A stretch of DNA of 64,000 nucleotides from Octopus sinensis (lineage: Eukaryota). The DNA is taken from the NCBI RefSeq assembly GCF_006345805.1, contig NW_021833417.1, positions 66,019-130,018 of the forward strand, given 5' to 3'. The notes beneath the pieces were generated by a model that saw only the letters and a program-made list of their open reading frames with translations, searched no databases and had not been told where the DNA came from. Shown piece by piece: positions 27,493 through 61,807 of the stretch (positions within the stretch are counted from its first letter, which is position 1; every line of letters begins with the position of its first letter). The position numbers and the translations under genes were made by a program.

Positions 27493-27560
27493 AAATAAAG
27501 CTAACACCAATTATATATATGATGATATATACAATTTTTATGTTTGTTCCTTCGAAAATA

Positions 27561-28050: not shown

Positions 28051-28152
28051 TGTTTTGTTTTTACCGTGTCTTTGTTAAATAAAACTTAAAACGAGTGAGT
28101 TAATTTATTAATTTGTTTGATTAATGTATAAAAATTAATTCTAGCAAAATCA

Positions 28153-29258: not shown

Positions 29259-29865
29259 TTATAGTCCTGCCATTCGATTATTAATGTAATGGACTGGTGC
29301 AAGCAATTGCTTTCATATGCAGTTTTATTTCTTAATTTGTCCGATATTTTAATGGTCTGAAATCAAGAAATTAGTAAATTTTATAAAAAACTTGTTGGGA
29401 AAAAAGAGGAATGAAATAGAAAGCATGAAATGTTTTTTGGAAGATTCATACTTTTACCCACTGCAAAGATGTAAGAATTTTGGGTGGTTTTCGTCGTCCT
29501 TTGAGTAGAGGGTTTTTAGAAACCTTGAGAAATTGAATTTAGCTAAAGAGAACAGTAGAAGTAGGTGTGTTTTCTGACTGAAACAAATCTATTGCAACGT
29601 CTGAGGAATACTGTGGCAGGACAAGGCACATTTTGAAAAGTTTGGTCATGAAATTGTTGTGATGTAATTTATTTATGGGTAGGAAAAACGTCAAGACAGG
29701 AAAAATTATTTCATTTATCCCATTAAAAGTTAAACATGTCAAATATCAAGTTGAACAAAAAGAAGAGCATTTCGAAAATGATTTTTCCCTAATCTTTAAA
29801 TAAAGCTTTTCTTATAAAACACAAAAATAAACAAGAAACGCCAATTTACTGAAACTCGAATAGTT

Positions 29866-30656
29866 TTAATTATTAAAGGATCCATAATCGTCGCCAATCA
29901 AATTTAGCGAGTCTGCAGACACAACGAAGGGTCCCTCTTGTCTGGACACACCCGGAGTGACCACAGTCAAGTAATACTACACTAAACAGTGCACACCAAC
30001 CTTGGGGACATAGAGAGAACATCGTGCACTCAATGCTTTGTAGCACGTCTCGATTGCCTTCTTCACATCCTCCTCCGATCCATTCGGGAAATTGGGAACT
30101 TGGCGCAAAATGGATTCGGACATTTGGCGGGCAAAAGCAGTGTCGACCACGTCATTTTCAAAGGAGACTCCTCGTTCGTTGACCATCCCCAAAAACCTTG
30201 TCATGTCGAGGAAACATACTTTGAGCCATCAGGGGAGAACCCGGCGACAGCGAAGGCACACAAAATAGGCTTGAGTTTACTTCTGCGCATATAAAGGAAT
30301 CTTTCCAGATATGAAAAGAGCATTTTCACGTCGACCGAATGCCCGTCCTTCAAAACGGAGTATTCCGAACTAATTTTATTTATTTATTACTCACATCATT
30401 CTTTCCATCAGAGAAATGACGTGCTGAGAATCGGCCAAATCTCCGGAGTACCCAACGACACTGCTGGGGTTTAGTTGGGAGAATCGAGGCACATCCGAGA
30501 TTTGAATGAGTGAACCGTGGTATATATTTCCACAGTCGGCAGCCAATATTATTCCGTCTTTGAACTTGCAGCCAATCACTCCCGTTTGATAAATTCCGAT
30601 ACTAGTTTATGTTTTATTTGTTGCGGGTATTTTAATTACAATATTACCCACCTCAT
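29866..30656 (-). CDS. PSMB4: Proteasome subunit beta type-4 (beta7)
   Basis: GVIGCKFKDGIILAAD, VGYSGDLADSQH, YMRRSKLKP and FLGMVNERG. Introns of 49, 25, 23 and 24 nt. Confidence 0.85.
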
Positions 30657-34836: not shown

Positions 34837-36119
34837 CTATTTCTGACGCTTGTAAATGACACCGAGACATGCATAGAATATATCGAGAGGTAATTGGAGG
34901 GCTCCACTCTTCAGTTCACACAATCGTGAGACCTCCTTTGAGATCAACGCGAATGATTCACTCTCGAATGTGCGGTAGAGATCGCAAAGACCGAGATCCG
35001 AATATATTTTCCTAACACATTCGTTAGAGTTAGGAGTTCCATATTTCTGAACTAATAAATTCATTTCTTGAGGGGAGGCTTTCTTCAAGGCCTGGACAAT
35101 CAACCAAGAACATTTATAATCCTCAATGTCAGTCCCCACCTTCCCCAACACTTCGGGGGACGCGAAACAATCCAGGTAATCATCTTGAGCCTGAAATAAT
35201 TCTCCTACCTTCATTAACACCTCTTCGAACTACAAAATGATATTAATATAGTCGACCAGGACTTTATAGTCCTCGTTGAGTGTTATGCCGTTCTGTCCCG
35301 ACTCGGTGTAGTGCAGTTCAGCCACATAAATTGCCAAGTGAATGGGGAGAACGAAGGTGTAGAAGGCAGTCTTCCAGCGGACTATAGTCCTGTAGTGTTC
35401 TGGAGTGTATATTTCGCGGACATCCAGGCCATTCGCAACCGCGTTCTTCCACCTGATAGGACTCATCAAATCAAGCTGCTGACCCACCACAGTGCGGAGA
35501 ATGGTCTGTCACAATAAACAACTCAGTTCTACATCATGAAATAACTGGAATAGTCTCTGATAGTTATGTTCGTGTGAAAAATACTCCTCCAGTAGAACAA
35601 ACACTGCCGATTCCAAAAAGAAGGAATCATTAATCGCAATATTCCCAACCTCTGTCTACTTTAATTGAAACAAGGAAATGCCACCCGTTTGTACCAGCAA
35701 GGTTTCCCACGTCGGGTAGAGGAATTGTCCATAATGTCATCGGCCACAAGAAAGAATGACTGGAGGAGTTCAACTGCCCAACCGAGAATGACGGCCTGGT
35801 TGAGACGTGTTGGAGAGGACGGGAGATTGTTGGCCTCTCGGATGAGTTCGTAGGCAACGACGACTGTAAGTCCTCTCACTTTCTTACCGTCAAATGCGTT
35901 GTACTTGAGACTCTGCGGCTGTGATTGCAATAACTGTACATTTATGAACCACTCCACTGATGGCCTGATTTCTGGGTATGACGAGAGCTTTGTTTCAATT
36001 TTTTGGAGGACTGTTGAGAATCCTTCGTTGAATAACTCTGAATATTTTTTAAACATTTCATTGTATTTGTCGATTTTTTCTAGGAAAAAATTGTAATAAG
36101 TTACACCTGGAATTATCAT
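34837..36119 (-). CDS. FDPS: Farnesyl pyrophosphate synthase, 7 exons
   Basis: GKKVRG, ELLQSFFLVADDIMDNSSTRRGKPCWY, GQQLDL, KTAFYTF, FQAQDDYLD and GTDIEDYKCSWL. Introns of 27, 27, 29, 26, 24 and 33 nt. Confidence 0.95.
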
Positions 36120-36491: not shown

Positions 36492-37776
36492 TTATTTTGA
36501 GAAATTGTGTCTAATTCTATTCCTCAACCGCAGTAGAAAGCCACAACACCTGTCTGAATCGCCGCTGCCCATCTCTTTATAAGAATTCCGGAACTTGCCA
36601 TTGACGGAACTCTAAAAACAAACAAAATAAGAGGAAACCTTAACGGAAGATACGACAGGAACAACCGTTTTCTGCCTAGGCTGAACAAATGAGCAGAACA
36701 AACTGACCACAGCGGGGTGTCTGCCGATCCAATCGAAGGCCCAGTCACACTGCAAGTTCTTACGAGCCAACAGCTTGTGAAACAGTCCTCTGAGATGACT
36801 ATAGTCTGGTTTATCAACAAAGCCTAATCCACGACAGTACGACAAAAATGTGCTGAACTCGACTAAAATAGGGACTAGCCAACTGACCTGGATATCCCTG
36901 ACATAATTCAGACACGGGAACTGTTTTCTTAGTCTCTCCTATCTTTTTATATCGATCAGTTATATTCTCAGCCTTCAGTCCCTGCCACGGCAAACTTCCC
37001 CGGAGAAAATAGAGGAGCATGTGCCCCAATGACTCCAAATCATCCCTCCTGCTCTGTTCTAACAATATGGCAGAAGGTGACCTCTCCCCAGGTGACTGTT
37101 GATGCTCATATAACGGGCTGTCCCCGTCAGACTTTTCTGTTCGCGGTAGGGAATGTGGTGGCCACTCTCCCGAATCATGTACTCCTTGGCCAGTCCAAAG
37201 TCGACTGAATGGACGAGGTGACATCTGTTGGGAGTAGACTGATGTCCCACCAGAAAGTTCTCAGGCTTTATATCTCTGTAAACAATGCCCTGTCCGTGAA
37301 TAAACTCCAGTCGATGCAACTATTATAAACTCGGGCAGACAACCAGCTGGATTGCCACCATCGAGACTGTCTTTACTGAAAACTTTCTGTTGCAACTGTC
37401 AAACAGATTCTCTAAACTAGGACCCAGTAGTTCCATGACCAGGGCGTTGTATCTCCCAGCTGGACCGAAGAAGAAGACGTGAGGGATCCCCTCTAAACAC
37501 GTGTTTAAGGACAGTCAACCTCCCCCACAAAGTCGACCATAAAATTTATATTCGAGATGGAGTTGGGGACTCTTGCACTTGATTAGTTCGAGTTTGACAG
37601 CCACGTATTCGTTTGTGTATAAATTACGGCCTGGAATGCTCGTATGTGGATTTACCAAGTCTAATTTCTCCGAAGTTTCCAGATCCTATTTTACGCCCAA
37701 TTCGATAGTTTGACCCGACCATGAGGATTCCTTTGTCTTGGTTGTGTCCGCTAATTGAATTTCTGGTATCTCCCAT
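36492..37776 (-). CDS. CSNK1G: Casein kinase I gamma (gilgamesh-like), 8 exons
   Basis: [56 protein letters not shown] and SRRDDLE. C-terminal CCGFLLR resembles the CK1-gamma palmitoylation motif. Introns of 23-30 nt. Confidence 0.92.
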
Positions 37777-40374: not shown

Positions 40375-43300
40375 ATTTTTTTTTAACAAACCAATGTTTA
40401 ATAAAAATTAATTATGTAAATTCTATCTTAAATTATTTAAGAATCCAGATCGTCAGTGATTTCTCTTCTTCGCTTGGAAGAAGAGTTTGCAACAAAATTC
40501 TCATCATTTTCCATTTCTGCGTCAAAGTAATTGTTCAACTGAGTGTCCTCACGACATGCCAGCTCCGCAAGTTGATTGGCGGCAGAGGCGTACTCCTCGT
40601 TGTCTACCTTCATCCCATGTCTGTGTTCAATAAGCATACTCTCTAGAGTCCTCTTCAGCACAACCGACTGGATGTATGTCCTCGTTCCTTCTTCAATGGA
40701 TAATTTGTCCATATGACTTTTAAAGAACTTTGAGACAACTCCATCCCATGTCAAGACAATTGGAATAATCTTCACTTTTGCTTCATAGAGAACCGACAGT
40801 TCGTTTGCAAGCAGGTCATATTTGTGAAATTTCTCCACTTCAACTTGCTTTAAACGGTCTTGCGAGGTAACTCCCACTTCGATTAAATGAATTTCTCTTT
40901 TCCTCTTGTCATAAACGAAGATATCAGGTTTATTGAATTGAACCTTTGTTTCAGTCATAATTGAAGTGTCAACTCTGATTTCGACATTTTGGGTCGACAT
41001 TGTTGACACGACTGAATGTCCTTTCAATTTCCTGCTTCGTTTTATTCCATACATTCGACACAAGTGGAGATGAATACACTTTACCACTTCGTTGTGTCTT
41101 CGGAGATAATCACTGTTTAGCATCCTACCACACCGCGTGGCTAGATGGTCAACAGTCTGCCTGCTTTTTTTGCAGTGGACGCATAGTGATCCCGTGTATG
41201 CAAAGAACAAATTCCTATCTTGCAAAAGACAGTACAATGCTTCGCTTCGTGGACCATTGTTCCCTTTCGATAGCCATTGCGAAGAAGTAGATATGTCGAC
41301 ATCTGATTCCTCCATACATTTGAACATCACCGAGTGTAGTGATTTACTGTTAATTCGGTTAAGCAAGAGTTTCCTTTGTGCGTCCTTCAGTAACTCAATG
41401 GTCAGATTTTCCCTGCCGACAGCTGCATATTTGGAGACAAGAAATTCTGCGATTGTGGCTAAGTGCCATTTTTTTCCTTTTATTACTCGCAGAATACCCG
41501 ACCTCCGCAGACAGGTAGTCGACTGTTTTTCCAAACTTTTAAGAAACTGGAAGAGCATTAATTCGCTTTTGAAAGAAATTGAGGCAAGTCCTCTTCCAAG
41601 GGTCTTGCGGTCCAAATACAACCTCTCCTTATTTGCAGGCTGGAGGTGTAACTTGAGAGTCGTAAGTAATCGGCGTATTTGTTGGTCAATCTCATCAAAT
41701 TCGTAAGGTTCAATATTGATTAGCCCAATATAATAATTATATAGGGATAATGCATATTCATTGATTCCACGAAACAAATTTACAGCATTCAGGTTTGTTT
41801 TTGACAACATAGTTATCCTCTTCTTGACATTCTCCAATATGGAGTCCATAACTTTATTCTTGAGAACATTACTTCCGCCATCTTCAAGTACACCCAAGTA
41901 GCGATATCCGTTGATTCCATCGACAGTCTCACAGCATGATAAAGATTCCACATTAGATGCTGATTTTTCGGAATTCATCTCTAGGCCGACACTTTCAAAA
42001 AATCCATTAACAGCCTCCATCATTTTGACTAACACATCTTCTTTGAGGGCAACTATTTTCAGATCGTCAATAAAGAAGAAATGATTGGTGGAGTATGTCA
42101 ACATATTGGGATCTTCCCGACTAATTTCGAGTTTGGGAAACATGGAGTTAAGCATCCTGCTTAGGGGATCCATCGCCATAACGAATAGCAGCGGGGACAA
42201 TGAATCTCCTTGGAGTATTCCCCGGCTTAACTTTACTTTCCCAATTCTTTTCCCATCGATATGTAAGTTTACTGTCCACTTCTTGACTATGTTCTTTACA
42301 AAGCTGACAATCCAATGTGGTATTCCAGAGCAATCCAATACGTGGAACAAGAACTCGTGATCAACTGAGTCAAATGCCTTCTTCACATCGACCCAAGCAG
42401 AATAGAGGCCATTTCCATACTCCTTATTTAAGCATTGGTTAATGAGGGCTTGCTCTTGGCGCCTTGACATTGCTTCCTCGTCCCAAGCTGATTATCTGAG
42501 ATTAAGCCAAATGCCTCGATGAAATCGGCCAGTTTGGCATTAACACATTTGGTGACAAGTTTATACAAAGTTGGCATACACGTTATAGGGCGTAAGTCCT
42601 TCGGGGTCTCACACTCACTTTTTTAGGGATCAAGTAAGTTACGCCAGTGTAAAACCAGCTATCAGGCGTGTACTCTCCATTAATTATTCGGACTATCTCT
42701 TTACACAGAACCCATGCAAAGAATCCATCTTCTTTAAGAAAAAGTTATACGTTCCGTCGCATCCGCATGCCTTCCAGTCAGGTGCATATTTGAGCATATC
42801 CATAATAAAATCACTTGTGAATTGAGGTCGCATGGTTTCACCGCCAGTACACCTCACACCCACAAAATCATAAACTACGGGCCCCATATTTTTCTTGCTC
42901 CAGACATCTTCCCAAAATGATAAGCACTCACCATCACCAAACCCATACAGGGTGGCTTCGTTGCTCGAAGATAAGTTTCGATAAAATCTTCTGCGGTTTA
43001 ATTCAAAACACGCATTGTCTTTCCGGAAATTTTTCCTCGAGGAATGGATAGATATCTGTTTCTTTTTGATTCTAATTAGATCATTCAATAGAGTCTCAAT
43101 TCTGGTTAGCTCCCCCTTCTTAGACTTCTTATATCCGTAGCGGCAGAGAACATCCATTGCCTTTTGCTTTTCTGCCTGAGGCAAGGTTTGTTTGGAGAAG
43201 GAACGAACTGTGTCAATTTCATCTGCTAATTTAGAGATTTTTCTTTCCGTGTTTTCCAACCATGTGCTCTGTGGTCTGGCTCTCGTAGTTAAGGCCAAAT

Positions 43301-43950
43301 AAGCACACTGTGCAGCATATAGAATATCGGTAATTTGATTAATATCTTGGGGCGGATCATCTTTTGTAATATGATAAATTGCAGAATTTAATCCAGCCAG
43401 GATATCAGTTTTTACCATCCTTCGTTGCACCTTTGGAGTTGGCTTTCGAGAGTCTCTCTGAATAGACTGAACTTTCCCAATTTGGAATTTGAGTTCCTCT
43501 AGGCAATTTCTGAAACTGGAAATTTCTACGTCCACATCATCTTGCACTCTGGAAGAGTCGCATCTCCCTTGCACATTGTTATTCCGTCTAGCCATGCTCT
43601 TTAGTTGGCATAAACTGGAGCACTTTGCCGAGTACTTCTCATTGAACTTCTCCAGGACAAGGTTCCAACCACCTCTTGGCATCCTTCCAAGTCTTTGCTT
43701 CACGGCAAGGGCAATCTGAGACACCCATTCGCCTTCAGAGACACCATTGACATTTCCGATGATCGCAGAAAGAGAATGCATCACCAACAAGATCTTCTTT
43801 AACACCATTAGCTCTTGTGGCATTGTGAGGTCCCATAGGCGACGGTCCTGTCTTTTTTAAGTTCTTTTTATTTGCAGGAAGGCCCGTAGGTTTCGTTTTC
43901 CTTAACTGCTTGGAAACGTACATGCACACACCACAACAACTAAACAAATT
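40375..43950 (-). mobile_element. Near full-length R4/Dong-like non-LTR retrotransposon (RT, CCHC and REL endonuclease)
   Basis: LRPITCMPTLYK, AWVDVKKAFDSVDH, GILQGDSLSPLLF, FFIDDLK, CVHCKKSRQTVDHLATRC and KPDIFVYD..IEVGVT. The two long ORFs are linked by three 1-nt deletions. Confidence 0.92.
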
Positions 43951-44939: not shown

Positions 44940-44963
44940 TTAATCAGGTTCGTGAGTCTAGAG

Positions 44964-47210
44964 CAGGGTTTCTCAAGTTTTTTAACGTCGGGGCCAAATC
45001 GATAATTAACCATTGTCTTCGGGGCCGCAGAATAAATTAAATTAAAACTTTCATTAACTTTTAACTAATTTTTTTTTAGATTCATTTTTTATTCAGAAAC
45101 CGAGATAGTTAGTCTTAATTAATTAAAGGAAAATGACTAAAACGAAAAATTGTTAACTAAAACGAAAAATTGTTAGCTATTTTAACTAATTGTTAACTAA
45201 TTTGTCATAACACGGAATATAGGAGGCACATGTAGATCGCAAAAGCTGGCATAAGTGATTATCAGTCAATTTATTTCGATATTTATTTTTTATGTGAATC
45301 ATTTTACTGAAAATTGACTCACATAAATAAGTGGATCCGAACATTGAAGCATATTTATAAGCATTTATGAGTATATTCGGATATTTTTCTTTGGGAAGTG
45401 AACTATAAAATTCCATTAAATTTTCAATCTTTTGCACTGAGGTAAATTGCACATCTGATTGAAGGTCTATCAATTCTAATTGGAGTGATGGCGGAGCATT
45501 CTTAGGATCTATATTGAATGGTGCTGCAAAAATTTTCATTGATGGCAAAATTTCATCAAAATTCTTAAAATAAACTAATTTTAATAAACCTTAGAACGTT
45601 TTTCAAATTCAACAATAAGGTGACTGATAATGGTAGTATATTTTTCAAATGAACCGTTAGCTTTATTTTCACTCAAACAAGTAAAATGAATTGTATCTTT
45701 GAGCATTATTTGATCCCTCCAAAGTTTTAATTTTGATATAAAAGAAGCAATAGATCCATAGAGTTGATGGCAAAATTTATATTTCCCCTGTAATTCACAA
45801 TTTAACGACGATAAATGAGAGGTTAGATCTACCCAAAAAGCTAAATCGGCAATCCACTCTTTACTGCTCAACAAATCATGGTATTTGTGGTCTTTAACAA
45901 ATTCTCTTATTTGAGGGAGTAGTTCATAAAATCTAACTTCTATTCAAGCAAATATACCTTTTGAGGCACGCGGCACGACTCAACCATCGAACAGTGGTAT
46001 GGTAAAGCACATCATTATGCACTGTGTCAATTTCCACTAACATTTTTTTAATCTCCTGTGATTGAGAGATTTACCGCGTATCCAATTCACAATGGACAAC
46101 ACCGTACTTATTACATTTTGCATTTTAAGTGACTTTGCGATTATATTCTCCTGATGAATGATACAATGTTGCCAAAATATAGGATCAAGATTTTTTTCAA
46201 GTCTCCATTCTGAATAAAGTCCATGAAACCCTTTATTACGACCAATCATATTCGCCCCCCCATCAGTACATATGGAAATTATTTTGGAAGGATCAATGTC
46301 AAATTCTTTAATACTTTCAAGGAATTCGTTAAGTACATCCATTCCTTTTGTAGTGCCTTTTAATGAACGAAGAGAAAAAAATTCTTCAGAAATTTTAAAA
46401 TCCGAAGTGACACCTCTAATGCATACGACCATTTGTTCGGTATCAGAGATATCTTTACTCGTGTCGACAGCAAAAGAATGATATAAAAAATCTTTCGATG
46501 TTCTATAAAAATTATTTTTAATAGTAAAGAACTTGATTAGCTGACGGGCAAGGTCCTCAAAAAACATTCTATTCTTCTTGTAATATATCTATCATTACTT
46601 AATGGTAATCGTTTTGCAATATTTTGTATATTTGACGGACAACATTCATCACAAAAAATGGAAATAGCAGTTTTAATAATTTCTCCGTCAGAATAAGGTT
46701 TCATATTTACAGCAAGAAGGTGGCTAATTTTATAAGACGTTAATAACTGATGCTTATTTTCCACTGGTTTAAATATTGAGGACTGATTTTTAAATGACGT
46801 CTTTAATATATTGAGTTTTTTTTTCCTTGACTCTCCGAGATATAAATTGTATATTTCGGAGTGCTTCTTATAATGACGTTCAATAGTATAATTTTTCAAT
46901 GAATTAATGACACAGTTGCATATCAAACAAACAGCTTTACCATTCAGTTCAACGAAAAAAAACTTTTCTTCCCATTCAATTTGAAATTCTCTATTTTCTT
47001 GAGATAATGTTCGATATTTCTTTGATGGCATGAAAAAATACTCAACCTGAAATATATTTACAAACACGTGTAGTTAAAATATTATCTTTAATAATATTAA
47101 TTTACAATTAATTTTATATCCAAAATTTATTTTAAAGTTTGGAAGTCGGGGCCGCAAAAAAGATTCTCGGGGCCGCATGCGGCCCCGAGGGCCGCACTTG
47201 AGAACCCCTG
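44964..47210 (-). mobile_element. Full-length hAT (Buster/SPIN-like) transposon with a perfect 8-bp TSD
   Basis: GTCTAGAG at 44956-44963 and 47211-47218. 15-bp TIRs CAGGG[T/G]TTCTCAAGT. Subterminal GGGGCCGC motifs, including the palindrome CGGGGCCGCATGCGGCCCCG at 47168-47187. Confidence 0.97.
45186..47031 (-). CDS. hAT transposase with three tiny GT-AG introns
   Basis: BED-like CLICN..H, SFAVDTSKD, ICTDGGANMIG, HCIIHQE, VRWLSR and MFGSTYLCESIFSKM. Introns at 46503-46532, 45933-45957 and 45564-45589, plus two 1-nt homopolymer deletions. Confidence 0.85.
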
Positions 47211-47229
47211 GTCTAGAGGGCGACAAATT

Positions 47230-48040
47230 CAATAATTGTCGCGCGCAATGGATTAAACGTGCGCCTAAAGTGAAACGATGTGGCCTTGAGAAAACCACGA
47301 AAAACCTCGAAAATAAAATTAACAATCGAGATTGCGAGAGAAGTTTTTATGGCTGATCGATACATAGTACTTCATAATCTTGTTTGCAAGTTTGAGAGCG
47401 GGTTCCGAGGAATTGTGGGCAACGGCCTCAGTTCCTCCGTCCTCCTCGCCGATAAGGCAATTAATCCTTCTTAGCGTTTTCCAGAAGGTGGCGCAGGAAT
47501 TTCTGTGACATAATCGTCCAACGCGACGACTCCACTTGAGTCCGTTATTAGTCCGGATCAGTTCAGAAATTTTGATATTCAACGAACGTATAGTATGATA
47601 TGATTCATTGGACTTGTTTTTCTTCAGGGCATCCCGTTCTTTGATAAGTGATAGGATTTGTGATGATAATCTTGGATTGAACTTCTTATATGAAGCGACA
47701 GGTATAAATAATTTATCGGCTTGCAAAATGATAGTAGACAGGATCTTGGCCGTCCTTTCCACCGTGCAATTTTCCATAGAGAGATCGAGCAGGCAGTCGT
47801 CTACATACAGCCCGAAACCATGCCAGTTAGCCTTCGAGTAATTTTCGAACTTCGTAGGGCGGCGCGTTGGGCAGAAAGGCCTTCTAAGTGTCAGTACAAT
47901 GGGGTTATGGTCGCTCGAGAAGCCATAACGAACATTCCACGAGATATATCCAGCCAAGGATGGAGTGCAGAGAGACAGGTCCGGGGATGTTGGGCTGTCT
48001 CTTCTACGGGTTGGTGTCCTTGTATGAGCATATGGGAATT
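47230..48040 (-). mobile_element. I/Jockey-like ORF2 fragment (end of the endonuclease and linker)
   Basis: SPDLSL, FSSDHNPIVLTL, KANWHGF, LIKERDAL and FWKTLRR. Confidence 0.75.
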
Positions 48041-48719: not shown

Positions 48720-49990
48720 TGTGAAGGCTTTATGTGACAGGCTCGAAGAATTGGAAAGTCTAATCTCTCGCATTTCCAAACTTGAGTCCCATTTAGGCCT
48801 TTTCTTGCTCAAGAACTATCTCTTTATACCGAAGCTAACTTATCTCATGCGCTCATCGCCCTGCTTTCTCGAACAAAATCATTTGTCTTGTCTCGACAAC
48901 ATGGTCTCCAAAGCTCTTGAGCTTCTCGTAAACATCAAATTCAAACCTTCAGACATGCGACGGGTTAATTTACCTATTCGTTACGGGGGCATCGGCATTC
49001 GTTCCTGTGTTGATTTATCCCTCCCATGTTACCTTTCCTCATTGTCTGCTTCTGCCAGTTCCTTCAACTCTGTTCTCTTCCCCTCCCCTGAACAGCCCGA
49101 GTTGGTGGAATATACGCCGGGTGTCAACATGTGGATTTCTCGTGGGCTTTAAATCCCGGACGTCCCTTCAGTTCAAAAGAACTGGGATGATATACATTGC
49201 TCCCATGTACTCGAAGATATCCGCCTACGTGCTGACCAATTTCAGTTGGCAAGCATCAATTGTGCCTGTCAACCCCACTCGGGCGATTGGCTTGACGCTT
49301 TGCCGATTTCTTCTGCTGGAATGTTGCTGGACGACGAATCTGTCCGCATCGGAATCTGTTTACGGCTTGGCATAGAGATTTGCCAGCCGCACCATTGCAG
49401 ATGTGGACAACTCATTGACAGGAGAGGTTTACACCCTCTCTCTTGTCGCCTCAGTGCCGGCAGGATCCCCAGGCACGCCTCATTGAATGACGTTGTGAAG
49501 CGCGCGCTTAACGCCGCTGGATTTTCCTCGATGTTGGAACCGATAGGACTAGACCGTGGAGATGGAAAACGCCCTGACGGGTCGACCTTATTCCCGTTCA
49601 GGAAGGGAATGGCACTCGTGTGGGATGTTACCTGCATAGACTCATTTTCTCCTTCATCGTTGGTCGACTCCGCTTCTCGTCCTGGATCTGCATCTGGCCT
49701 TGCCGAATCTAGGAAAACTGCAAAATATGCCTCTTTGACCGATACCTGCTGCTTCATTCCCCTGGCTTTCGAGACCAGTGGGATAATTGGACCCAAAGCC
49801 CTCAAACTCCTCTCAGAGATTGGTTCAATCATCTCGAGGAGGAGTCACGACAGTCGTGAAACGAGCTGGCTTTTTCAGCGGATATTGTTCGCGATATTAC
49901 GTGGAAATTGCCTGTCCATCCGCTCGGCGACTCATCTAGTTTAGTTAACTTCTCTTCTCTAATTTTCTTGTTTCAAAAAAAAAAATTATT
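48720..49990 (+). mobile_element. 5'-truncated CRE-clade LINE (RT tail, CCHC and REL domain) with an A-rich tail
   Basis: LPIRYGGIGIR, HSGDWLDALP, CRCG..GLHPLSC, RHASLND, DGKRPDG, VWDVTC and FIPLAFETSG..QRILFAILRGN, followed by poly(A). Confidence 0.9.
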
Positions 49991-50188: not shown

Positions 50189-51410
50189 TTAGACGACTCT
50201 CAAATTTTTGCTTTCCGAGTTCCCCATGACTCCACTTTGATCTTCCCCGCCATGATCCTCAATCTCATCCTGGGGCGTGCAGTCTCTGGGTCTCTTAAGG
50301 GACCTGCTGATCTTCATAGAGAAATTATATTTCCGCCAGTTCCTATTTACGGAATTTGCAGAGTCCAGAATTTCACTGAAGCCATGTTTGTACTCGATAA
50401 ACATGCTCTCCAGAGTGGCCTTCAGCGTTACAGTCTGGATGCAAGACCGAACACGTTCTTCAATCCCAAGGAGCTCCATGTACTTGCGGTAGATTGTTGA
50501 GACGATTCCATCCCACGTAATGACAATTGGCACAATCTTCACCTTAGCCTTGTGAATCAGTTGTAATTCACTAGCTAAAATGTCGTATTTGTGCAGTTTT
50601 TCTACTTCCACACTCTTTAGGTTATTTATTGAAGTCACACCAACTTCAATAAGCCATATTAGGTTCTCTCTTTTGTCGTAGAGGAAAATGTCGGGTTTTT
50701 TATATTGAATTTTCAACTCTGTTAAATTGTTGTATCAACTCGTATTTCTGCCAAGGTGTTGCACATTATACTCTGGACAGATAATAAATACACAACTATG
50801 AATGGGTTTTATTTCCAATGCGTGTATTGTGCAATAGTCTTTTCAATTCAAAATTCTTGCCTACGGAACTCTCAAACTTGTCCACTCAAAGTTCAAAGTC
50901 TGCGAGTTCATGGTTAACCTGGACATTAATTCAAACTAAATAAATCGCATATCAAGTGACAAAAGTGGTCCAGAATGTAGATTACAACTTTAGTCCACGT
51001 CACGTTCAACTCTACGAGAGAATGATCAATGGAAAAATCTTTACTTGAAAATCGTAGAACAGCGAAAGGTTATTTTCAAAAAGTTATATTCATAGCACTT
51101 CTCATCATCAACTTGATTCAGAATTTTGGGAGATAAATTTCACTTTAATATTGTTGTGAACATTTTTGAACTTTGTTTCCGTCAGAATCGTCAAACTCCA
51201 ATTTCAACTTTAAATAAGAAATCGTGATCACAGAATCAGAAGGCTTCCCAAATCAACCCAGCTAGAATAACGGGCATTTGCATGCTTCTTATTGAATCAG
51301 TGATTCATACGAGCTTGTTCTTTAGAACCCTGGCACTGTTTCCTCGTCTCTAACTGGTTATCAGAAATGAACCCAAACGCATTCACAAAATCTGAACTTT
51401 TTCATTTTCA
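50189..51410 (-). mobile_element. Decayed, internally deleted R4/Dong-like copy
   Basis: KPDIFLYD..IEVGVT..KYDILASEL..TWDGIV at 50189-50716, and FGFISDNQLETRKQCQGSKEQA near 51300-51400. Confidence 0.8.
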
Positions 51411-54654: not shown

Positions 54655-56045
54655 ATGGAATAATATTTGAAAATTTGGCTTCCTGTGCGACGGATGGTCC
54701 TATGTCAATGGTTTGAAAATATAAGGATTTGTTTCTTTCTTAAAAAAGATTATCCATGGGTCATTACGGTTCATTATATTTTGCATCGGCATCAATTGTA
54801 TCAAAGATTTTATGTCATGATTTACATAAATCTTTAAACATGGTAATCAAAACAATAACAAAATAAAAACACGAAGCAAATGTGATCGTCTTTTTAGATG
54901 CTGGTGAAGATTTTATTTGACTTTTATTACACACGGAAGTAAAATGGCTTTCAAAAGGAAATGCTTTAGAAAGATTTGTTAATTTTTCGATGCAATAGTC
55001 GCATTTTTCTAGACTGAAGAAGACTTGGTTTGGCTGAAGAAATCATTTCACGAAAAAATGATATATTCTATTTGAATTGAATTTTACAAAATTTAATGAA
55101 ATTACTATTTTTCTTCAAGGAAATTTTGTCAACATGATTGATTGCAAAAAAATAATGAAAACATTTGCAAGAAAATTATTGCGTTATCGACATAATTTTT
55201 CTATAAATCAGTTTTAAAAACATTTCACAACTATCTGAGATAAGTAAAATACTACTAAAGTTGAGCAGAATTAACAATATCATGGTCTAACTAATAATTT
55301 TTAATAAAAATTTAATGTTTAATTTGATTTATTTTTTATATTTTGACTTTTGAGTTAATACAAAAACAACCAATTAAAGGATAATGCACAAAAATTTTTA
55401 AATTGTATGTGGACAAGGGGGCGATAAAATATCTAAGGGGGCGATGAACAAAAAAAGGTTGCGAATGCCCGTCTTAGTGAAAGGATAATAATAGTCGTAA
55501 TTTTTATCGAAAAAGTGGTCGGATGGACTTGGAGAGTTTATGTTCTTGGCTATTTTATTAAGATTAAAACGTAAATTCTTTGAATTACATTTGTCTGGTG
55601 ATATGAATGCATGATTCTTTTTAGTTTTGTCGAGAAAAAGTGAAATTTATTTATTTATAACCCCCAAGCTTGCACAACATGGCAAGCCCAGCACAAACAG
55701 TCACAACTAACTAATCAAATGAAGGAGCAAGGAACGAAGGGATTGCTTGTGCCGATCCGATCACGATCAAAAAAAAGTGAAATAGAAACATTAAAAGTAT
55801 TTTTTGTTAAAAAAAAACTTTTTAGAATTAGAGCTGAATAGTTAAAAAATTGACCACAATAATTCCATTAATAATGTTTAATTGGTTCCATTAATTTATA
55901 TTGTTATATTCATCGATTACTCTCAGCTTTTTGACTAAAGTAGCTAGTTATTCAAATTTTATTACGAAGGCTTAATTTTTATTGTACTCGAATTAATCTT
56001 ACATATAAAGTGTTTTTATTAAAACTAATCTTTGAATAACACACA

Positions 56046-57245
56046 ATGGAGGCTGAAATATCTAAATATAAAAAACTCTGCAAAAAATATAATGCATCCG
56101 AGCTTACAATTTCCAAGAGCCAGCTTGGATCTGAAGAAGTTAACCTGAATGGATACAGTCTTACTGAAACTGATCTCAAATGTTTTTTCCTATCTTGGGA
56201 TGTCGAATTTGTGATTTAACAAGTTAGAATTCTTTGATAAAATTCAAAAACTCAATTTAAATGGGACTAAGATAGCCGACGATTTGGTTCAATTTTTGTC
56301 AATTTCATCCAAAGGCGACTTGCTTAACTTCACTGTTTATAATATTTCAAATTCTTTAGAGTCTTGAAAATTGTTTGATTGGAAATAAATTGCGTCGTTT
56401 TAGACTCGCTGAAAAATAAAAAACTTGAAGATTTAAATCTTTCAGGTTTATTGTCAAATCTTATTTATAGGGAATGTAATTAAGGAATCGACCATGACTA
56501 GTTTATTGAGAATTTGCAGGTTTAAAATCACCAATCATTTCAAGCACCAGGAAACTCTTTTGAAACTTACATTGTCAAAATGTTCGATAGAAAACAGTTC
56601 TGTTCAATTATTGGCATCTTATTTACGTACTTCTAAGTGTAAATAATAAATAGTCAAGATCGCTCGATTAAATCCGTTGACCTTAGCTGGAATAAAATTT
56701 CGAAAAATGGTTCCGTTTCAATATCAGAAATTTTTATGGTCTCTTTTATGTTTTTTTTTAAATTGAAAGAAAAATCAATGTATTAAAATTTTGAATGTTT
56801 CAATGAATGGGTTTGGATTGGAAGCTTGTCAGAAATTTTGCTTTTCACTGAGAAATACAAATTCATTAAACGTTTTAGATCTTTCCTATAATCATTTGGA
56901 TTCCAAAAGTCTAAATTTTTTACTAAATGGTCTTAACTACAACAGTTCTGTTGAAACTTTAATTGTAAAGCCGAGTAATTTTATTTAAAGCTTACGGGGA
57001 ATTCCTTTGATACCAACGGTCCGATCATGATCTTGAAAATGTTGAAATTTTCAACAATGTCAGTTTTATCCAAAGTTGAAATTGATGTATATAAATTTAT
57101 TGAAATCTTTCAGAATAGTGCAGTCAATTCAGAGTTCGAAAAATTGTACTCAGAGCTCGATCTAAAAAGGAAAATCGAGATTTTCTATGTAAAAAAACTT
57201 TTTAACTCAATAATTTTGAAAAACAATAAGCAAATAATATTTTAA
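56046..57245 (+). CDS. LRR protein, copy 2 (5' half frameshifted by small deletions)
   Basis: Duplicate of 22383-23590. Confidence 0.7.
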
Positions 57246-57513
57246 AAATTCCTTAATTGAACAAAGAACTGGATGTATGTTTTATTAAAATAAAATTTAA
57301 TTTGAAAAAGTTCGTCTTTGTATTGTATCATTAATATCAATTTCGAGAATTTTTTTATTTAATGCATTAAAACAATTCCTGATCATTCCTTTAGATAAGA
57401 CAGTATTCCGTATTGTAAAAAGATCGTATCCTCTAAATTCTATTTTTACAATTAATTATGAACAAAATTTCTCCTTTTTGTTGTAAAAATATAAAGCTTT
57501 GTTCGAACAAATA

Positions 57514-58115
57514 TCAATATCGTAAGAAGTAGTCAATTACTGTACTAAAAGCAGCAAATCCAATTGCCCCGAAGAGACCAGGCTTAAATCCGGCTAATTT
57601 ATTAATACTTGGCAAACCTCTAAAACCCAGCAATCCCCCAGTAATTCCCCCTGCGGCAGTTCCATTGATAAGTTCGCTCTTGCCACGATACTGCGAGAAT
57701 AGAATGACATGTCTAACGCTCTCAATCGAACATTCAATTCCCGAAAATAGAAATCCAACCACGGAAAAATTCCTGGCATACGACCAAGAACGAGATTTCA
57801 TGTCGTTCAGTACAGATCGGAAGGTCTGTGTCTGTGAAGTCGACGGGGGTTCCAATCCGACAGAAAAAACGCCAAAAAGTGACCCGAGTCCAAGACCAAA
57901 GAATCTCAGTTAATTTCATTACCAGCAAAATAGCTCAAAACAGCACGAAATGGACATGATTCAGTCAGCTGCATGATTATTTGCTGTTCGTTTGGTATTG
58001 GTGGTTTCCTTAAATACGGTTTACTTAGAACATGGTCTATGTTTTCACGTTGATTTCCAAGATAATTTTTAATGAGGTGGTTATATAATTTTGGAACATC
58101 GGCATGTGAATCCAT
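57514..58115 (-). CDS. TIMM22: Tim22, copy 2
   Basis: Duplicate of 23859-24460 with two amino acid differences (F/L and V/I). Confidence 0.88.
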
Positions 58116-59536
58116 ATAACGTGCAACACTTTTCACCTCGTTATTTAAATGTGAATCATATTTATTACCATAATTATCATCAGAATATAACTTTTTTATT
58201 AACGGAAATTAAACCCTTATGCTGAGTGAATTTTCAAGCAATTCTCGCGATTGATAACTAGGCAGATACGCTAGAAAAGCCAGCTAGTCTCTCTAGGCCT
58301 GCGAGTTCCTTCAAATGCTTTTATGGGCCTTCACTTCGAAAACTTGGCTGGTTTCAACAGCAATGAGCAAAAAGATTTAACGATTTTCAGTATGCTGACT
58401 CAGAAGAGCAGGCAGAGTTAATCAAATTATATTTGTCGAAAAGTTCAACCTGGATGACATCTCAGACGAGGCATTTGCCCTCAGCCAATTTAAATATTTC
58501 GAAACGTAATTTTAAATGCAGTATTCATTTTTGACATTATTCAAAAATTAAAGATTATTCTATCTTTGATGCATTTTTCAGAGTTACCGCAGGTCCATTC
58601 GACAACACGCAATCAATAAAGTCATCTCACGTACTCAGAGTCGGCGGCATCACTTACTCAGCTGGAACCCATCGACTAAGAAAACAAAGATAGAAATTTT
58701 TTCTTATCAAGTTTTGTAAGATTTTAATTTTTAAAAAGACATGTTCCATTTTATTATTGAAATGAAAATCTTATATTAAAATAAAAAATCATTAAAATTT
58801 ACTTTCTGTTTAAATCATCAATGATTTATCCACTTAAGTTTTTGAAGGTTTAAATATGCTTGAAATTGATTATTTATCATTTTTGAGTTTTAATAAATTA
58901 ACATTACGAACAAAATTAACAATATCAATGTATGAATCCCACTGATGAGACGGTAAATTTATTTGTAGATAGAGCTATCAAACATAATAAAGTCTAGTAA
59001 AAGTAAGAAAATTCAGATGAGCACAAATTTGAACCAAGTACGTATTTCTTTCATATTTAACAGCCTTTTAATAGTTTTTTCTTTATGACTCTTTCCCGAT
59101 GTAATGACTAGTTTTCTTGTTATAATAAATAAAAATTAGTTATTGGCCATATGTTATCAACTTATATTTTGTCTCAAGTATTATGACAAATGCGACAAAC
59201 ATATCGTTTTTATTGAGTTAATTTATTAAAATTGCGTATTCACAAGTATAGTGACTGTTACCTCCAACAATATTTGGTAATTATCATTATTCATTGATTA
59301 TAAGAATCACATTAATTAGATTATTCATGTTTATTAATATCTTTGTATTTAAATATATTTGGCCTCGCAATAGTTTAGTTTTGTGCAATACTAGTTTAGA
59401 AAATTATGTATTAGTAAAATAATTCTATAGGTGCCAATAAATATAGATTTTTTTTCACAGCTGATAAGTATTCAATTTTGATAATGGCATTAGTTGACGT
59501 TTATTTATAATTATTAATTTTTTGCTTATTTTAGAA

Positions 59537-61147
59537 ATGAAAATAACAATTTTCCTGGTTTTCTACTCAAGCATGGGATTCAAAAATTATTTATATTTTC
59601 AAATTCCTGAAGAATCTAAACCGGCAACATTCGTTGGAGCCATTTCCAGCCAATCTAACAAACAATCAGGAAACGTCATGAAATTTTATAAACTGACAAA
59701 TAATATTGAGAGCAGTTATTTTATTATAAACAAAACAACTGGAATTATTACAACAGCTTCAATCATTTTACGTGAAAGTATAATTCGGTGCCGTGGACAA
59801 AAAAAATGTGTTGTAGAATTTAAAGCAAGTTCTATTTCAAAACAGGAGTTCAGAGTCTATGTGATACAAATCAATATATGTGATGTTAATAACAATGCTC
59901 CAACTTTTTACCCAAATTACATTTCGCATGAAATTGAAGACTTAGTGAATGACGTTTTGATACAACTCCCTTCTCCTTATGACTACGACAGTCCTAAATT
60001 TGGCATTAGAACATGTTTTCTGGAAAATTCAGAAAATTGGACATCAATTTTGGTAACTAAAATGAATTCGGGACAATATAACCTTAAACTTAAGGTTTAT
60101 GTTAATTTAACATACTCTAATTCGAAACTTGTAACTATTCAGTGTTTGGATTGGGGATATCCCCCTTTAAAGGGACGACTTTTTGTACATCTCATTTTTA
60201 AAAAAACAGTTATTTGCTCGAAGCCAATTTTTGAATACAAAAAATTAAGAATTTCAGTAAAAAACAAAACAGATTCTAATCCATTTATAATTACAAAACT
60301 GGCTGCAGTCAGAAATTCAAGTTTCCGTGGGAAAGAAGAATACAAATCACAGATTTTGGCTTACAAGATCATTGGAAATACGGTTTTTAAAATTGATCCA
60401 GTAAACGGAACAGTTTATGGTTATATTGATGAAATGGGACACTTTTTTAATTCTGGAAAACTTTTGATGCTTAATGCAAGTGTTTGTTGTGGAATTATGT
60501 GTGACTATTGTGAAATATATATTAAATTCGAGCGAATTACAAGGAAAACAGAAAATTCCTTTGGTTTTGAAAATTATATAAACATCTTTCTCGAAAAGGA
60601 AAAGTTTAGTGTTTCCAGAAAATCAGCAAATGGAACTATTCTTGGCTATGTAGTAATTGATAGCAATTCTCATGCTTCTGCCCGATGTAGAATTTTTTCT
60701 TCAAGTCAAATTGTTATTCAAAAATTGACAAATACCACATTCGTAATTCTCAATATCTTAGATAATGAGAATACTATATTTAATATGACCAAATGTTTTG
60801 AATTAGAGTGCAAAATTACAAACAAATTATTTCGCTCAAAAATTATTTGTGTTAATATTACAGAAAATGCAGTCTCGCCCGGGATTATAAAATTTCTAAA
60901 AAACAAGTTTTCAAGTTATGTATTTATTCTTGTTACAACATCACTTGGAATATTTTTTTCAATTTTTTTTCTTTTTATTTTCATTCGATATAGTCGTTAC
61001 CATTTCAAAGTAAATTTCATGTTACCAATTTAGAATGACCGAAAACACAACTTTGTTAATTCGAATAATTCAAATAAATATCCCGACTGTATTAAACAAT
61101 TAAATTTTCCTTACTGCGATAGTAGGGGATATAATTACGGGAAATAA
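59537..61147 (+). CDS. Protocadherin-like protein, copy 2
   Basis: Translation identical to 25882-27492. Confidence 0.8.
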
Positions 61148-61807
61148 AAATAAAGCTAACACCAATTATATATATGATGATATATACAATTTTTATGTTT
61201 GTTCCTTCGAAAATACTAAAATAGGTCAACCGAGTCACTGGGATTTTTCACATCCACATAAATCGTTGTCAGTGAATTTCGATAGGGTCTCGATCAGTAT
61301 TTGTTAACCAATACCTGATTCTTAACTCTCTGACAATTCCTTCAAATTCCTAACTAGTTTTTGTAAACAGAATCGCATTCACTTACAAAAAAGTCATCAA
61401 CAGATAAGACGATAATCATTCGAGCAGACTGGTTATCTAATTGAAAGATTAAATAAGCGCCCCAGTACATAACCACTCTGAAATCGAGAGAGAATCAAGA
61501 TATGGGTTATTGCTTCATCAAACATATTTCAGAGCCAAAAGGAAGTATTCTAAACATGAGATAGTCTTCGGTAACTCAGATGGTCAGTAATTTGCAATTA
61601 CAAGTACATATTCATGTATCATTTGCAGTCTTGGGTGGCGTGTGGGGACAATACCGAGTGAAGATAAGGTCGCTTGTGAAGTGCGTCAGGATAACGTGAT
61701 TAATTTGTTTTGTTTTTACCGTGTCTTTGTTAAATAAAACTTAAAACGAGTGAGTTAATTTATTAATTTGTTTGATTAATGTATAAAAATTAATTCTAGC
61801 AAAATCA

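What the first reader, a model, noticed from the sequence alone, without database searches (positions are those of the whole stretch)
44964..47210. Intact-ended Buster/SPIN-type hAT whose transposase carries three host-sized tiny spliceosomal introns
Seen: 15-bp TIRs and a perfect GTCTAGAG TSD, so this copy arrived by transposition. The transposase has three AT-rich GT-AG segments of 30 nt (46503-46532), 25 nt (45933-45957) and 26 nt (45564-45589). Removing them gives QLIK|TSKDFLYHSFAVD, LKR|FYELLPQIREF and EKRSK|NFDEILP, which align without gaps to the hAT motifs as I recall them. Two of the three remove frameshifts and stops. The only other defects are 1-nt deletions in a T run and an A run. 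Known: some hATs have introns (Ac, Tol2), but Buster/SPIN transposases are usually single-exon. Inference: the introns were gained in this lineage at host intron size, in a mobile element. This would be a natural system for studying de novo tiny-intron gain and possibly splicing-based control of transposase.
Basis: partly seen in the sequence, partly recalled or inferred. Interest (0 to 1): 0.82.

Follow-up and report, generated by a model that had tools for sequence, protein, structure and literature searches.

The report
Jumping gene with three newly gained tiny introns
A recently active cut-and-paste transposon, apparently in the genome of a dicyemid (a tiny octopus kidney parasite), has a transposase gene broken by three 25-30-base introns that its relatives elsewhere lack, so it is a clean, recent case of intron gain at the smallest intron size known in animals.

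Summary
Window 44964-47210 is a 2,247-bp Buster/SPIN-type hAT element. It has 15-bp TIRs (14/15 matching), a perfect 8-bp TSD (GTCTAGAG) and a minus-strand transposase gene. Three GT..AG segments of 30, 25 and 26 nt interrupt that gene.

Five sibling copies at four other sites (99.3-99.7% identical) lie on contigs labelled Octopus sinensis. Each site has its own nnnTAnnn TSD. All carry the segments, except one allele pair whose internal deletion removed segment 2. In two siblings, removing the three segments leaves an uninterrupted 587-codon ORF, while the unspliced reading stops at codon 365, upstream of the catalytic Glu.

Eighteen homologues align without gaps across all three junctions. 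Three outgroup genes in genomic DNA, and a second Buster family in the same genome, have no insertion there. Host genes on the same contigs have 23-29-nt introns. Their proteins are very divergent (CK1-gamma at most 65% identical to any known), so the host is a dicyemid-like animal, not the octopus.

The window copy itself is defective: two private 1-nt deletions and a 3-nt insertion.

I found no RNA evidence, so splicing is inferred, though strongly (chance about 1e-7). Any regulatory role for the splicing is untested.

The parts
44956..44963 (.). Target-site duplication, left copy (GTCTAGAG)
   Evidence: Identical 8-mer at 47211-47218. It fits the Buster consensus nnnTAnnn (PMC3517528) and the SPIN consensus NYYTARRN (PMC3014272).
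44964..44978 (+). Terminal inverted repeat at the 3' end of the element (relative to the transposase): CAGGGTTTCTCAAGT
   Evidence: Matches the other terminus at 14 of 15 positions. Identical in all six copies.
44989..45026 (+). Two subterminal CGGGGCC motifs (44989-44995, 45020-45026)
   Evidence: All five CGGGGCC sites in the 64-kb window lie within about 65 nt of the element's ends. The expected number is 0.9, and 0 of 100 shuffles reached 5. That they bind transposase is inferred.
45136..45175 (.). Perfect 2 x 20-bp tandem repeat in the 3' untranslated part
   Evidence: Repeat family D3.
45186..45563 (-). Exon 4, including the TAG stop at 45186-45188. It encodes the hAT C-terminal region with the catalytic Glu (YLCESIFS, 45306-45329).
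   Evidence: Pfam Dimer_Tnp_hAT scores 27.8 bits against a cut-off of 21.4. A profile match to the Hermes transposase C-terminus has E = 0.002. C543 and E544 are invariant in 60 homologues.
45564..45589 (-). Intron 3: GTTTATTAAAATTAGTTTATTTTAAG. 26 nt here, 27 nt in L001, L009 and L010. Phase 0, contains in-frame stops, AAG acceptor.
45590..45932 (-). Exon 3
   Evidence: It is 50-53% identical to the nearest outgroups, the same as exons 1-2.
45933..45957 (-). Intron 2: GTATATTTGCTTGAATAGAAGTTAG. 25 nt, phase 2. Unspliced, it shifts the frame and stops translation at codon 365.
45958..46502 (-). Exon 2. It carries both catalytic Asp residues (FAVDTS 46457-46474, CTDGGANM 46247-46270), the CxxH motif (46148-46165) and RW (45975-45992). 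It has a private 1-nt deletion at 46052.
46503..46532 (-). Intron 1: GTTCTTTACTATTAAAAATAATTTTTATAG. 30 nt, phase 2, in frame without a stop. If retained it adds FFTIKNNFYR, 12 codons upstream of the first catalytic Asp.
   Evidence: None of 18 homologues has residues at this position.
46533..47031 (-). Exon 1, starting with ATG at 47029-47031. It encodes the N-terminal CxxC...HxxxH zinc finger (46861-46929). It has a private 1-nt deletion at 46564 and a net +3-nt change at 46586-46589.
   Evidence: Pfam SPIN-DOC zinc finger scores 26.1 bits, just below the cut-off of 27.3.
47147..47189 (.). Three subterminal CGGGGCC motifs, including a perfect 24-nt palindrome CTCGGGGCCGCATGCGGCCCCGAG (47166-47189)
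   Evidence: (I17).
47196..47210 (-). Terminal inverted repeat at the 5' end of the element: CAGGGGTTCTCAAGT on the minus strand
   Evidence: Matches 12 of 15 positions of the SPIN terminus CAGYGGTTCTCAACC (PMC3014272).
47211..47218 (.). Target-site duplication, right copy (GTCTAGAG)

Best explanation
This is a copy of a young, recently mobile Buster/SPIN-type hAT DNA transposon. It lives in the genome of an animal with ultra-short introns, most probably a dicyemid, the kidney parasite of octopuses.

The transposase gene has four exons separated by three spliceosomal GT-AG introns of 30, 25 and 26-27 nt, the normal intron size of this host. The host spliceosome must remove introns 2 and 3 to join the N-terminal half (zinc finger and both catalytic Asp residues) to the C-terminal half (catalytic Glu and the hAT dimerisation region). 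Unspliced RNA encodes only a 365-residue truncated protein. The spliced 587-residue enzyme would then cut the element at its CAGGG termini, probably guided by the subterminal CGGGGCC repeats, and insert it at nnnTAnnn sites with an 8-bp duplication.

The introns arose within this element's lineage, after it split from its intronless relatives.

Shown: the anatomy, the multiple independent insertions, an ORF that is intact only after segment removal, the absence of the segments from outgroups, and the host intron size.
Inferred: that the segments are actually spliced, that the enzyme is active, that the CGGGGCC repeats are binding sites, and that the host is a dicyemid.

The window copy carries two private frameshifts and is probably dead, unless these are assembly errors.
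For: 1. Termini, TSD and segments are as described.
2. There are five further copies at four further sites, 99.3-99.7% identical. Each site has its own TSD: ATCTAGAC, G/ATATAGAC, GTCTAGAT, CACTAGAC. Excising the L009 copy restores one continuous frame in the element it interrupted.
3. In L001 and L009, removing exactly the three segments gives a 587-codon ORF from ATG to the natural stop. The unspliced ORF is 365 codons.
4. The junctions align without gaps in 18 homologues from sponge to vertebrates. All 31 invariant columns of a 60-sequence alignment are kept, including D179, C279/H282, W339 and C543/E544.
5. Exons downstream of the stop-containing segments are as conserved as the upstream ones, 49-53% against 52-57%.
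6. P(GT..AG) per random insertion is 0.0049, so about 1.2e-7 for all three.
7. Host introns on the same contigs measure 25, 27, 24, 23, 25 nt (CK1-gamma) and 29, 27, 27 nt (FPPS) in the window, and 24, 24, 25, 25, 24 nt (DEAH helicase) in L010. The published dicyemid median is 27 bp (PMC6543705).
8. Outgroups are single exons in genomic DNA: P0004 1806 nt for 601 aa, Clavelina 1461 nt for 486 aa, Hydra 1809 nt for 602 aa.
9. hAT identity rests on Pfam PF05699 above its cut-off, GTF2IRD2-like/Buster best hits and a profile hit to Hermes.
Against: - There is no RNA evidence. No spliced or partly spliced product is present as an exact sequence among about 15 billion proteins. No protein 90% or more identical to the C-terminal half exists in the searched collection. 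NCBI's gene models for the sibling copies are all unspliced.
- The copies are so young (0.3-0.7% divergence) that an intact downstream ORF is expected even without selection. ORF integrity among siblings therefore does not prove function by itself.
- Intron 1 is in frame and stop-free, so it could be retained as coding sequence.
- Intron 3 uses an AAG acceptor, whereas 12 of the 13 host introns I mapped end in TAG and one in CAG.
- The host was identified indirectly. No dicyemid reference sequence was compared.
Confidence: 0.82

Rival explanations
1. The three segments are ordinary small insertions in a non-autonomous, already dead family that an intact relative moves in trans. The GT..AG ends and the sizes are coincidence, and nothing is spliced.
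For: No transcript evidence was found. The copies are young enough that downstream ORF integrity needs no selection. A second Buster family with similar termini exists in the same genome.
Against: Three of three insertions bounded by GT..AG has P of about 1.2e-7. All three fall in the narrow host intron size range. The family consensus has no other defect in 587 codons. The second family is only 37% identical and has different termini, and the copy seen is itself decayed, with an in-frame stop.
Confidence: 0.04
2. The introns are real but ancestral. They were inherited from an older intron-bearing Buster lineage, possibly in another host and at larger size. They were lost in the sampled relatives and merely shrank in this host.
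For: The nearest outgroups are only 52-54% identical, which leaves a long unsampled branch. Buster/SPIN elements are known for horizontal transfer (PMC3014272, PMC3517528).
Against: Every relative whose genomic structure was checked is a single exon. So is the co-resident second family. Parsimony favours gain on the branch leading to this element.
Confidence: 0.1
3. The segments are removed at the DNA level, as internal eliminated sequences during programmed DNA elimination, rather than by RNA splicing.
For: Only general knowledge that dicyemids have been reported to eliminate DNA during development (from memory, not checked here). The tools cannot tell removal from DNA apart from removal from RNA.
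Against: The boundaries are GT..AG, not the TA..TA typical of ciliate IESs. Size and end motifs equal those of introns in ordinary host genes on the same contigs. No copy lacking a segment precisely was seen among six copies.
Confidence: 0.02
4. The element belongs to the octopus genome, as the database labels say, where 25-30-nt segments could not be spliced. The copies would then be inert there or result from host-parasite transfer.
For: The sibling copies sit in assembly GCA_006345805.1, and their products are named Octopus sinensis in RefSeq.
Against: The contigs that carry the copies also carry conserved genes with 23-29-nt introns. The window's CK1-gamma is at most 65% identical to any known protein, including molluscan ones. 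Introns under 30 bp are known in animals only from dicyemids and myxobolid myxozoans (PMC13644364). D. japonicum was collected from O. sinensis (PMC6736024).
Confidence: 0.03

Closest known systems
SPIN and other Buster-family (hAT-Charlie) transposons, e.g. SPIN_AC, TcBuster, AeBuster1, and the GTF2IRD2-like proteins derived from them
   Same: - 8-bp TSD fitting nnnTAnnn / NYYTARRN.
- Termini CAGGGGTTCTCAAGT against CAGYGGTTCTCAACC.
- About 590-600-residue transposase with an N-terminal zinc finger, a DDE core and a C-terminal hAT dimerisation region.
- Best database hits are GTF2IRD2-like.
   Different: - Every relative whose gene structure I checked is a single exon. This family has three introns of 25-30 nt.
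- The nearest relative is only 52-54% identical.
- Placement against named reference Buster sequences was not done.
Intron-containing hAT elements of the Ac family: Ac (maize), Tol2 (medaka), Restless (Tolypocladium)
   Same: The transposase mRNA must be spliced by the host before a full-length enzyme can be made (established knowledge, from memory).
   Different: They belong to the other major hAT clade. Their introns are of ordinary size (tens to hundreds of nt) and lie at unrelated positions. No case with introns under 30 nt is known to me. I found none in the literature searches, which returned no paper on dicyemid transposable elements.
Host spliceosomal introns of dicyemids (Dicyema japonicum, Dicyema sp.)
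   Same: GT..AG ends, 23-30 nt, T-rich 3' part. Published median is 27 bp, with two thirds under 30 bp (PMC6543705). The introns mapped here are 23-29 nt.
   Different: They lie in a mobile element rather than a host gene and are demonstrably derived. Host introns are reported to sit mostly at conserved ancestral positions (Ogino et al. 2010, as cited in PMC6543705).
Drosophila P element, third intron
   Same: Unspliced message would encode a truncated N-terminal protein, and the full transposase needs intron removal (established knowledge).
   Different: There is no evidence here for regulated or tissue-specific retention. This is an analogy only.
Introners (transposable elements that create introns; PMC9860276)
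   Same: Both link mobile DNA with intron gain.
   Different: Introners are themselves the introns and occur as many near-identical copies in unrelated genes. Here the three intron sequences occur nowhere else in the roughly 185 kb of sequence compared (the window and ten loci), and the introns sit inside the transposase gene.

Membership tests
hAT superfamily, Buster/SPIN (hAT-Charlie) clade | 8-bp target-site duplication | tested here: met
   Five insertion sites. Four TSDs are perfect and one matches 7 of 8.
hAT superfamily, Buster/SPIN (hAT-Charlie) clade | TSD consensus nnnTAnnn (Buster) rather than nTnnnnAn (Ac) | tested here: met
   CTCTAGAC, ATCTAGAC, RTATAGAC, GTCTAGAT and CACTAGAC all have TA at positions 4-5. 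The consensus is from PMC3517528.
hAT superfamily, Buster/SPIN (hAT-Charlie) clade | Short TIRs with a YARNG terminal motif, SPIN-like CAGYGGTTCTCAACC | tested here: met
   CAGGG fits YARNG. The terminus matches SPIN_AC at 12 of 15 positions.
hAT superfamily, Buster/SPIN (hAT-Charlie) clade | Transposase with a DDE triad, CxxH and RW motifs, and a C-terminal hAT dimerisation domain | tested here: met
   PF05699 scores 27.8 bits against a cut-off of 21.4. D179, D246, C279/H282, W339 and E544 are conserved in a 60-sequence alignment. Hermes C-terminus profile hit has E = 0.002. All of this requires removal of the three segments.
hAT superfamily, Buster/SPIN (hAT-Charlie) clade | N-terminal BED/SPIN-DOC-type zinc finger | tested here: inconclusive
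   PF18658 scores 26.1 bits, just under the cut-off of 27.3. C35, C38, H53 and H57 are invariant or nearly so.
hAT superfamily, Buster/SPIN (hAT-Charlie) clade | Phylogenetic placement with reference Buster transposases (TcBuster, AeBuster1, SPIN) | not tested
   No reference sequences were at hand. The only support is indirect: the best hits are GTF2IRD2-like proteins, which PMC3517528 places in the Buster family.
U2-type spliceosomal introns of the host | GT at the 5' end and AG at the 3' end | tested here: met
   Three of three segments, identical in all copies that carry them. Chance is about 1.2e-7.
U2-type spliceosomal introns of the host | Length within the host's intron length distribution | tested here: met
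   30, 25 and 26/27 nt against 23-29 nt for 13 host introns mapped here. The published median is 27 bp, with one third at 30 bp or more (PMC6543705).
U2-type spliceosomal introns of the host | Removal restores the reading frame and collinearity with intronless homologues | tested here: met
U2-type spliceosomal introns of the host | Absent from mature mRNA | not testable with these tools
   No RNA-seq access. Exact look-ups and homology searches found no spliced product.
Introners | The intron sequence recurs as near-identical copies in unrelated genes | tested here: not met
   Only low-complexity 14-18-nt matches outside the element, in the window plus ten loci.
Ciliate-type internal eliminated sequences | TA..TA boundaries and excision from DNA | tested here: not met
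   Boundaries are CAA|GT..AG|AAC, AAG|GT..AG|ATT and AAG|GT..AG|AAT. The DNA-level excision part is not testable.

The most novel reading that the evidence does not exclude
In this animal new introns are born already ultra-short: an AT-rich 25-30-nt filler with GT..AG ends is enough to be spliced. An active transposon has picked up three of them and now depends on host splicing. Differential removal would then act as a switch on transposition. Intron 1 is in frame and so optional, while retention of intron 2 gives a truncated 365-residue protein with the DNA-binding part but no catalytic Glu. This would resemble the P-element repressor, perhaps restricting activity to the germ-line (axoblast) cells.
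Probability: 0.15. Interest if true: 0.8.

Novelty: new variant of a known kind. Interest (0 to 1): 0.62.

Why it matters
- **A polarised case of intron gain.** Intron gain is rare and hard to catch in animals. Most dicyemid introns are thought to be old introns that shrank. Here the ancestral state is known to be zero introns, because the relatives are single-exon transposases. The three gains are therefore polarised without ambiguity, and they have the host's 25-30-nt size.
- **A defined test substrate.** The family gives a small, multi-copy substrate for asking what the minimal signals are for splicing introns under 30 nt, and whether such introns arise at that size.
- **A database problem.** At least five RefSeq proteins named Octopus sinensis (XP_029657494.1 and others) are truncated, unspliced readings of this transposon. 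They lie on contigs that look like parasite contamination.
- **If the introns are not spliced,** the family is simply a dead hAT with odd insertions and the interest falls away.

Tried and rejected
- **PDB by single sequence:** no hit. Only the profile of 60 homologues reached Hermes.
- **Structure prediction of the spliced protein:** No fold comparison was made.
- **Source of the window:** I looked up two window ORFs (Tc1/mariner 14655-15635 and RT 40437-42470). Neither is on record.
- **Host identity:** the CK1-gamma search gave no near-identical self-hit, so the host label stays indirect.
- **Transcript evidence:** five spliced or partly spliced products are absent as exact sequences. A search with the C-terminal 288 residues found nothing above 52% identity except the overlap with P0001. 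A metagenome scan with a pattern matching both the spliced and unspliced junction 2 gave 0 hits.
- **Paralogous empty site for the window copy:** none found in the window or the loci.
- **Intron sequences elsewhere (introner-like spread):** none found.
- **Bacterial-type promoter/terminator scan:** not meaningful for a eukaryote. Its only use was to flag the 24-nt palindrome.
- **Rejected ideas:** octopus origin of the contigs, ciliate-type IESs, and chance insertions (see rivals).
Full report
**1. The observation**

- The element spans 44964-47210 (2,247 bp).
- Its ends are CAGGGTTTCTCAAGT and, reverse-complemented, CAGGGGTTCTCAAGT. They match at 14 of 15 positions.
- GTCTAGAG flanks both sides (44956-44963 and 47211-47218).
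- The transposase reading frame runs on the minus strand from the ATG at 47031.
- It is interrupted by three GT..AG segments: 46532-46503 (30 nt, in frame, no stop), 45957-45933 (25 nt) and 45589-45564 (26 nt).
- Removing these, and repairing two 1-nt frameshifts, gives a 588-residue protein.
- That protein matches Pfam Dimer_Tnp_hAT above its cut-off. It matches the SPIN-DOC zinc finger and DUF4371 more weakly.

**2. Sibling copies**

[quoted passage not shown] Its cluster has four members.

Fetching the encoding contigs gave five more copies of the same element in assembly GCA_006345805.1. They are 99.3-99.7% identical to the window copy over their whole length.

| Copy | TSD (transposase orientation) | Note |
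|---|---|---|
| window | CTCTAGAC | two private frameshifts |
| L001 | ATCTAGAC | intact after segment removal |
| L009 | GTATAGAC / ATATAGAC | intact after segment removal; nested in another element |
| L010 | GTCTAGAT | own small deletions |
| L007 / L008 | CACTAGAC | same site on two contigs, probably alleles; 273-bp internal deletion |

- Each copy has different flanking DNA and its own 8-bp duplication.
- All TSDs fit the Buster consensus nnnTAnnn (PMC3517528). Most fit the SPIN consensus NYYTARRN, and the termini resemble SPIN's CAGYGGTTCTCAACC (PMC3014272).
- The L009 copy sits inside a different Buster-type element. Deleting it together with one TSD copy restores a single continuous reading of that older element. 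This serves as an empty-site proof of transposition.

**3. Are the segments introns?**

- All six copies carry segment 1. The four full-length copies carry segments 2 and 3. The L007/L008 pair lost segment 2 in its deletion and keeps segment 3.
- Segment 3 is 27 nt in L001, L009 and L010, and 26 nt in the window and L007/L008. This length difference would shift the frame if the segment were coding.
- In L001 and L009, removing exactly the three segments leaves an uninterrupted 587-codon ORF from the ATG to the natural stop. Unspliced, the ORF ends at codon 365 inside segment 2. That truncated reading is what NCBI annotated.
- The spliced protein aligns without a gap across all three junctions with 18 homologues from sponge, Hydra, tunicates, hagfish, fish, amphibians, a bryozoan and a lobster.
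- It keeps all 31 invariant columns of a 60-sequence alignment. These include both catalytic Asp residues in exon 2 and the Cys-Glu of the catalytic Glu motif in exon 4. A profile of this alignment reaches the C-terminal catalytic region of the Hermes transposase in the PDB (E = 0.002).
- Exons 3 and 4 are as similar to the nearest outgroups (49-53%) as exons 1 and 2 (52-57%).
- A simulated random insertion of the same composition is bounded by GT..AG in 0.49% of trials, allowing for sliding. For three of three that is about 1.2e-7.

**4. The host and its introns**

The window is a TE-rich animal genome. Using recalled human proteins only as guides to locate exons, I mapped introns in conserved host genes.

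| Gene | Location | Intron lengths (nt) |
|---|---|---|
| Casein kinase I gamma | window | 25, 27, 24, 23, 25 |
| Farnesyl-diphosphate synthase | window | 29, 27, 27 |
| DEAH-box helicase | L010, next to the L010 copy | 24, 24, 25, 25, 24 |

- All 13 introns have GT..AG ends, and 12 of the 13 end in TAG.
- The transposon's 30, 25 and 26/27 nt therefore match host size.
- The spliced CK1-gamma is at most 65% identical to any protein in the collection, with a flatworm, molluscs and rotifers at the top. That is far too divergent for an octopus gene.
- Among animals, introns under 30 bp are reported only for dicyemids and myxobolid myxozoans (PMC13644364).
- The dicyemid median is 27 bp (PMC6543705).
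- D. japonicum has 36.7% GC and 49% repeats rich in LINEs, and was collected from Octopus sinensis (PMC6736024).
- Together with metazoan-specific genes in the window (ONECUT-like, cadherin-like), this points to a dicyemid.
- It also suggests that the 'Octopus sinensis' contigs carrying the element are parasite contamination.
- This assignment is inferred. I could not compare with a dicyemid reference, and the source of the window was not found.

**5. Gained or inherited?**

- The nearest relatives (52-54% identity) are from tunicates and unnamed marine samples.
- Three outgroup genes on genomic contigs are single exons:
  - P0004: 1,806 nt for 601 residues
  - Clavelina P0006: 1,461 nt for 486 residues
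  - Hydra P0024: 1,809 nt for 602 residues
- P0002 is also a single ORF, but it lies on short Logan contigs that may be transcripts.
- The second Buster family in the same genome (37% identity) reads in one frame through all three positions.
- Parsimony therefore places the three gains on the branch leading to this family.
- Whether they arose at 25-30 nt or shrank afterwards cannot be decided, because no older copies of the family were available.
- The intron sequences occur nowhere else in the sequence compared, so they are not introner-like repeats.
- Intron 3 is flanked by a 4-nt direct repeat (TAAG) and intron 2 by AG. This is weak and may be chance.

**6. The window copy**

- Relative to all five siblings it lacks an A at 46564 and a T at 46052, and has a net +3-nt change at 46586-46589.
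- All its private differences but one substitution are indels, and that substitution adjoins the 3-nt insertion. The pattern is compatible with long-read assembly error, but the loss of an A between Ts is not a simple homopolymer contraction.
- As it stands, this copy cannot encode the enzyme. L001 and L009 can, if spliced.

**7. Mechanism**

- Shown: the anatomy of a cut-and-paste hAT element, and recent transposition to at least five sites.
- Shown: five CGGGGCC motifs confined to the two subterminal regions (5 observed, 0.9 expected), including a 24-nt palindrome at 47166-47189.
- Inferred: the host spliceosome removes the three introns, and introns 2 and 3 are obligatory because the catalytic Glu lies in exon 4.
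- Inferred: the 587-residue enzyme binds the subterminal repeats and moves the element.
- Speculative: that intron retention regulates activity. Unspliced RNA would give a 365-residue protein with the zinc finger and both Asp residues but no Glu. Retaining intron 1 would add ten residues just upstream of the first Asp.

**8. What is missing**

There is no RNA evidence.
- Exact look-ups of five spliced or partly spliced products failed.
- A homology search with the C-terminal half found nothing above 52% identity apart from the overlap with P0001.
- A metagenome scan for junction 2, spliced or unspliced, found nothing.

**9. Comparison and novelty**

- The element is a new member of the Buster/SPIN clade.
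- Introns in transposase genes are known, for example in Ac, Tol2, Restless and CACTA elements (PMC4158355, listed).
- My searches returned no paper on dicyemid transposable elements, and I know of no animal transposase gene with introns under 30 nt.
- I rate it a new variant of a known kind.
- It is of real interest for intron-gain and minimal-intron research, and it has a practical side result for the Octopus sinensis annotation.

Noticed in passing
window 20999-30345 and 54655-64000: A 9.37-kb stretch is repeated at 99.4% identity with a spacing of 33,656 bp. It runs to the end of the window and includes the cadherin-like, Tim17/22-like and hydrolase-like ORFs. It may be a segmental duplication or an assembly artefact. 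The hAT element lies between the two copies.
   Followed up: partly
L001, L007, L008, L009, L010 (contigs VCDQ01002078.1, VCDQ01011168.1, VCDQ01006159.1, VCDQ01013161.1, VCDQ01002361.1 of GCA_006345805.1): RefSeq proteins named Octopus sinensis (XP_029657494.1, XP_029655752.1, XP_029656231.1, XP_029655454.1, XP_029654578.1) are unspliced, truncated readings of this transposon. At least one of these contigs (L010, positions 1376-2900) carries a DEAH helicase gene with 24-25-nt introns. These contigs are therefore probably dicyemid contamination of the octopus assembly.
   Followed up: partly
L009 8989-9834 and 12072-12987 (minus strand); L001 2979-4362; L007/L008 12147-12839: The same genome holds a second Buster-type hAT family, about 37% identical in protein, without the three introns. 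The L009 copy of the studied element is nested inside one of its copies. L001 holds a 1.4-kb derivative with termini CAGCGGTTCTCAAAT / CAGGGGTTCTCAACC.
   Followed up: partly
window 20356-21588: A lone SPIN-like terminus CAGGTGTTCTCAACC at 20356, followed by a weak (23%) hAT transposase similarity at 20872-21588. No matching second terminus was found in the window.
   Followed up: partly
window 14655-15635 (+): An uninterrupted 326-residue Tc1/mariner-type transposase ORF, judged by eye from the ORF listing translation and not scanned against any family library. It is not on record as an exact protein in the public collection.
   Followed up: no
window 384-1607, 40437-43823, 47319-47957, 48721-49944, 50189-50716: Several long ORFs of non-LTR retrotransposons (CCHC gag-like, reverse transcriptase, endonuclease part) surround the element. 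This fits the LINE-rich, roughly 49% repetitive dicyemid genome described in PMC6736024.
   Followed up: no
window 34837-36119 (-) and about 36700-37750 (-): The host farnesyl-diphosphate synthase and casein kinase I gamma genes lie tail to head and are split by 23-29-nt GT..AG introns. Standard tblastn reads straight through these as short in-frame insertions.
   Followed up: yes
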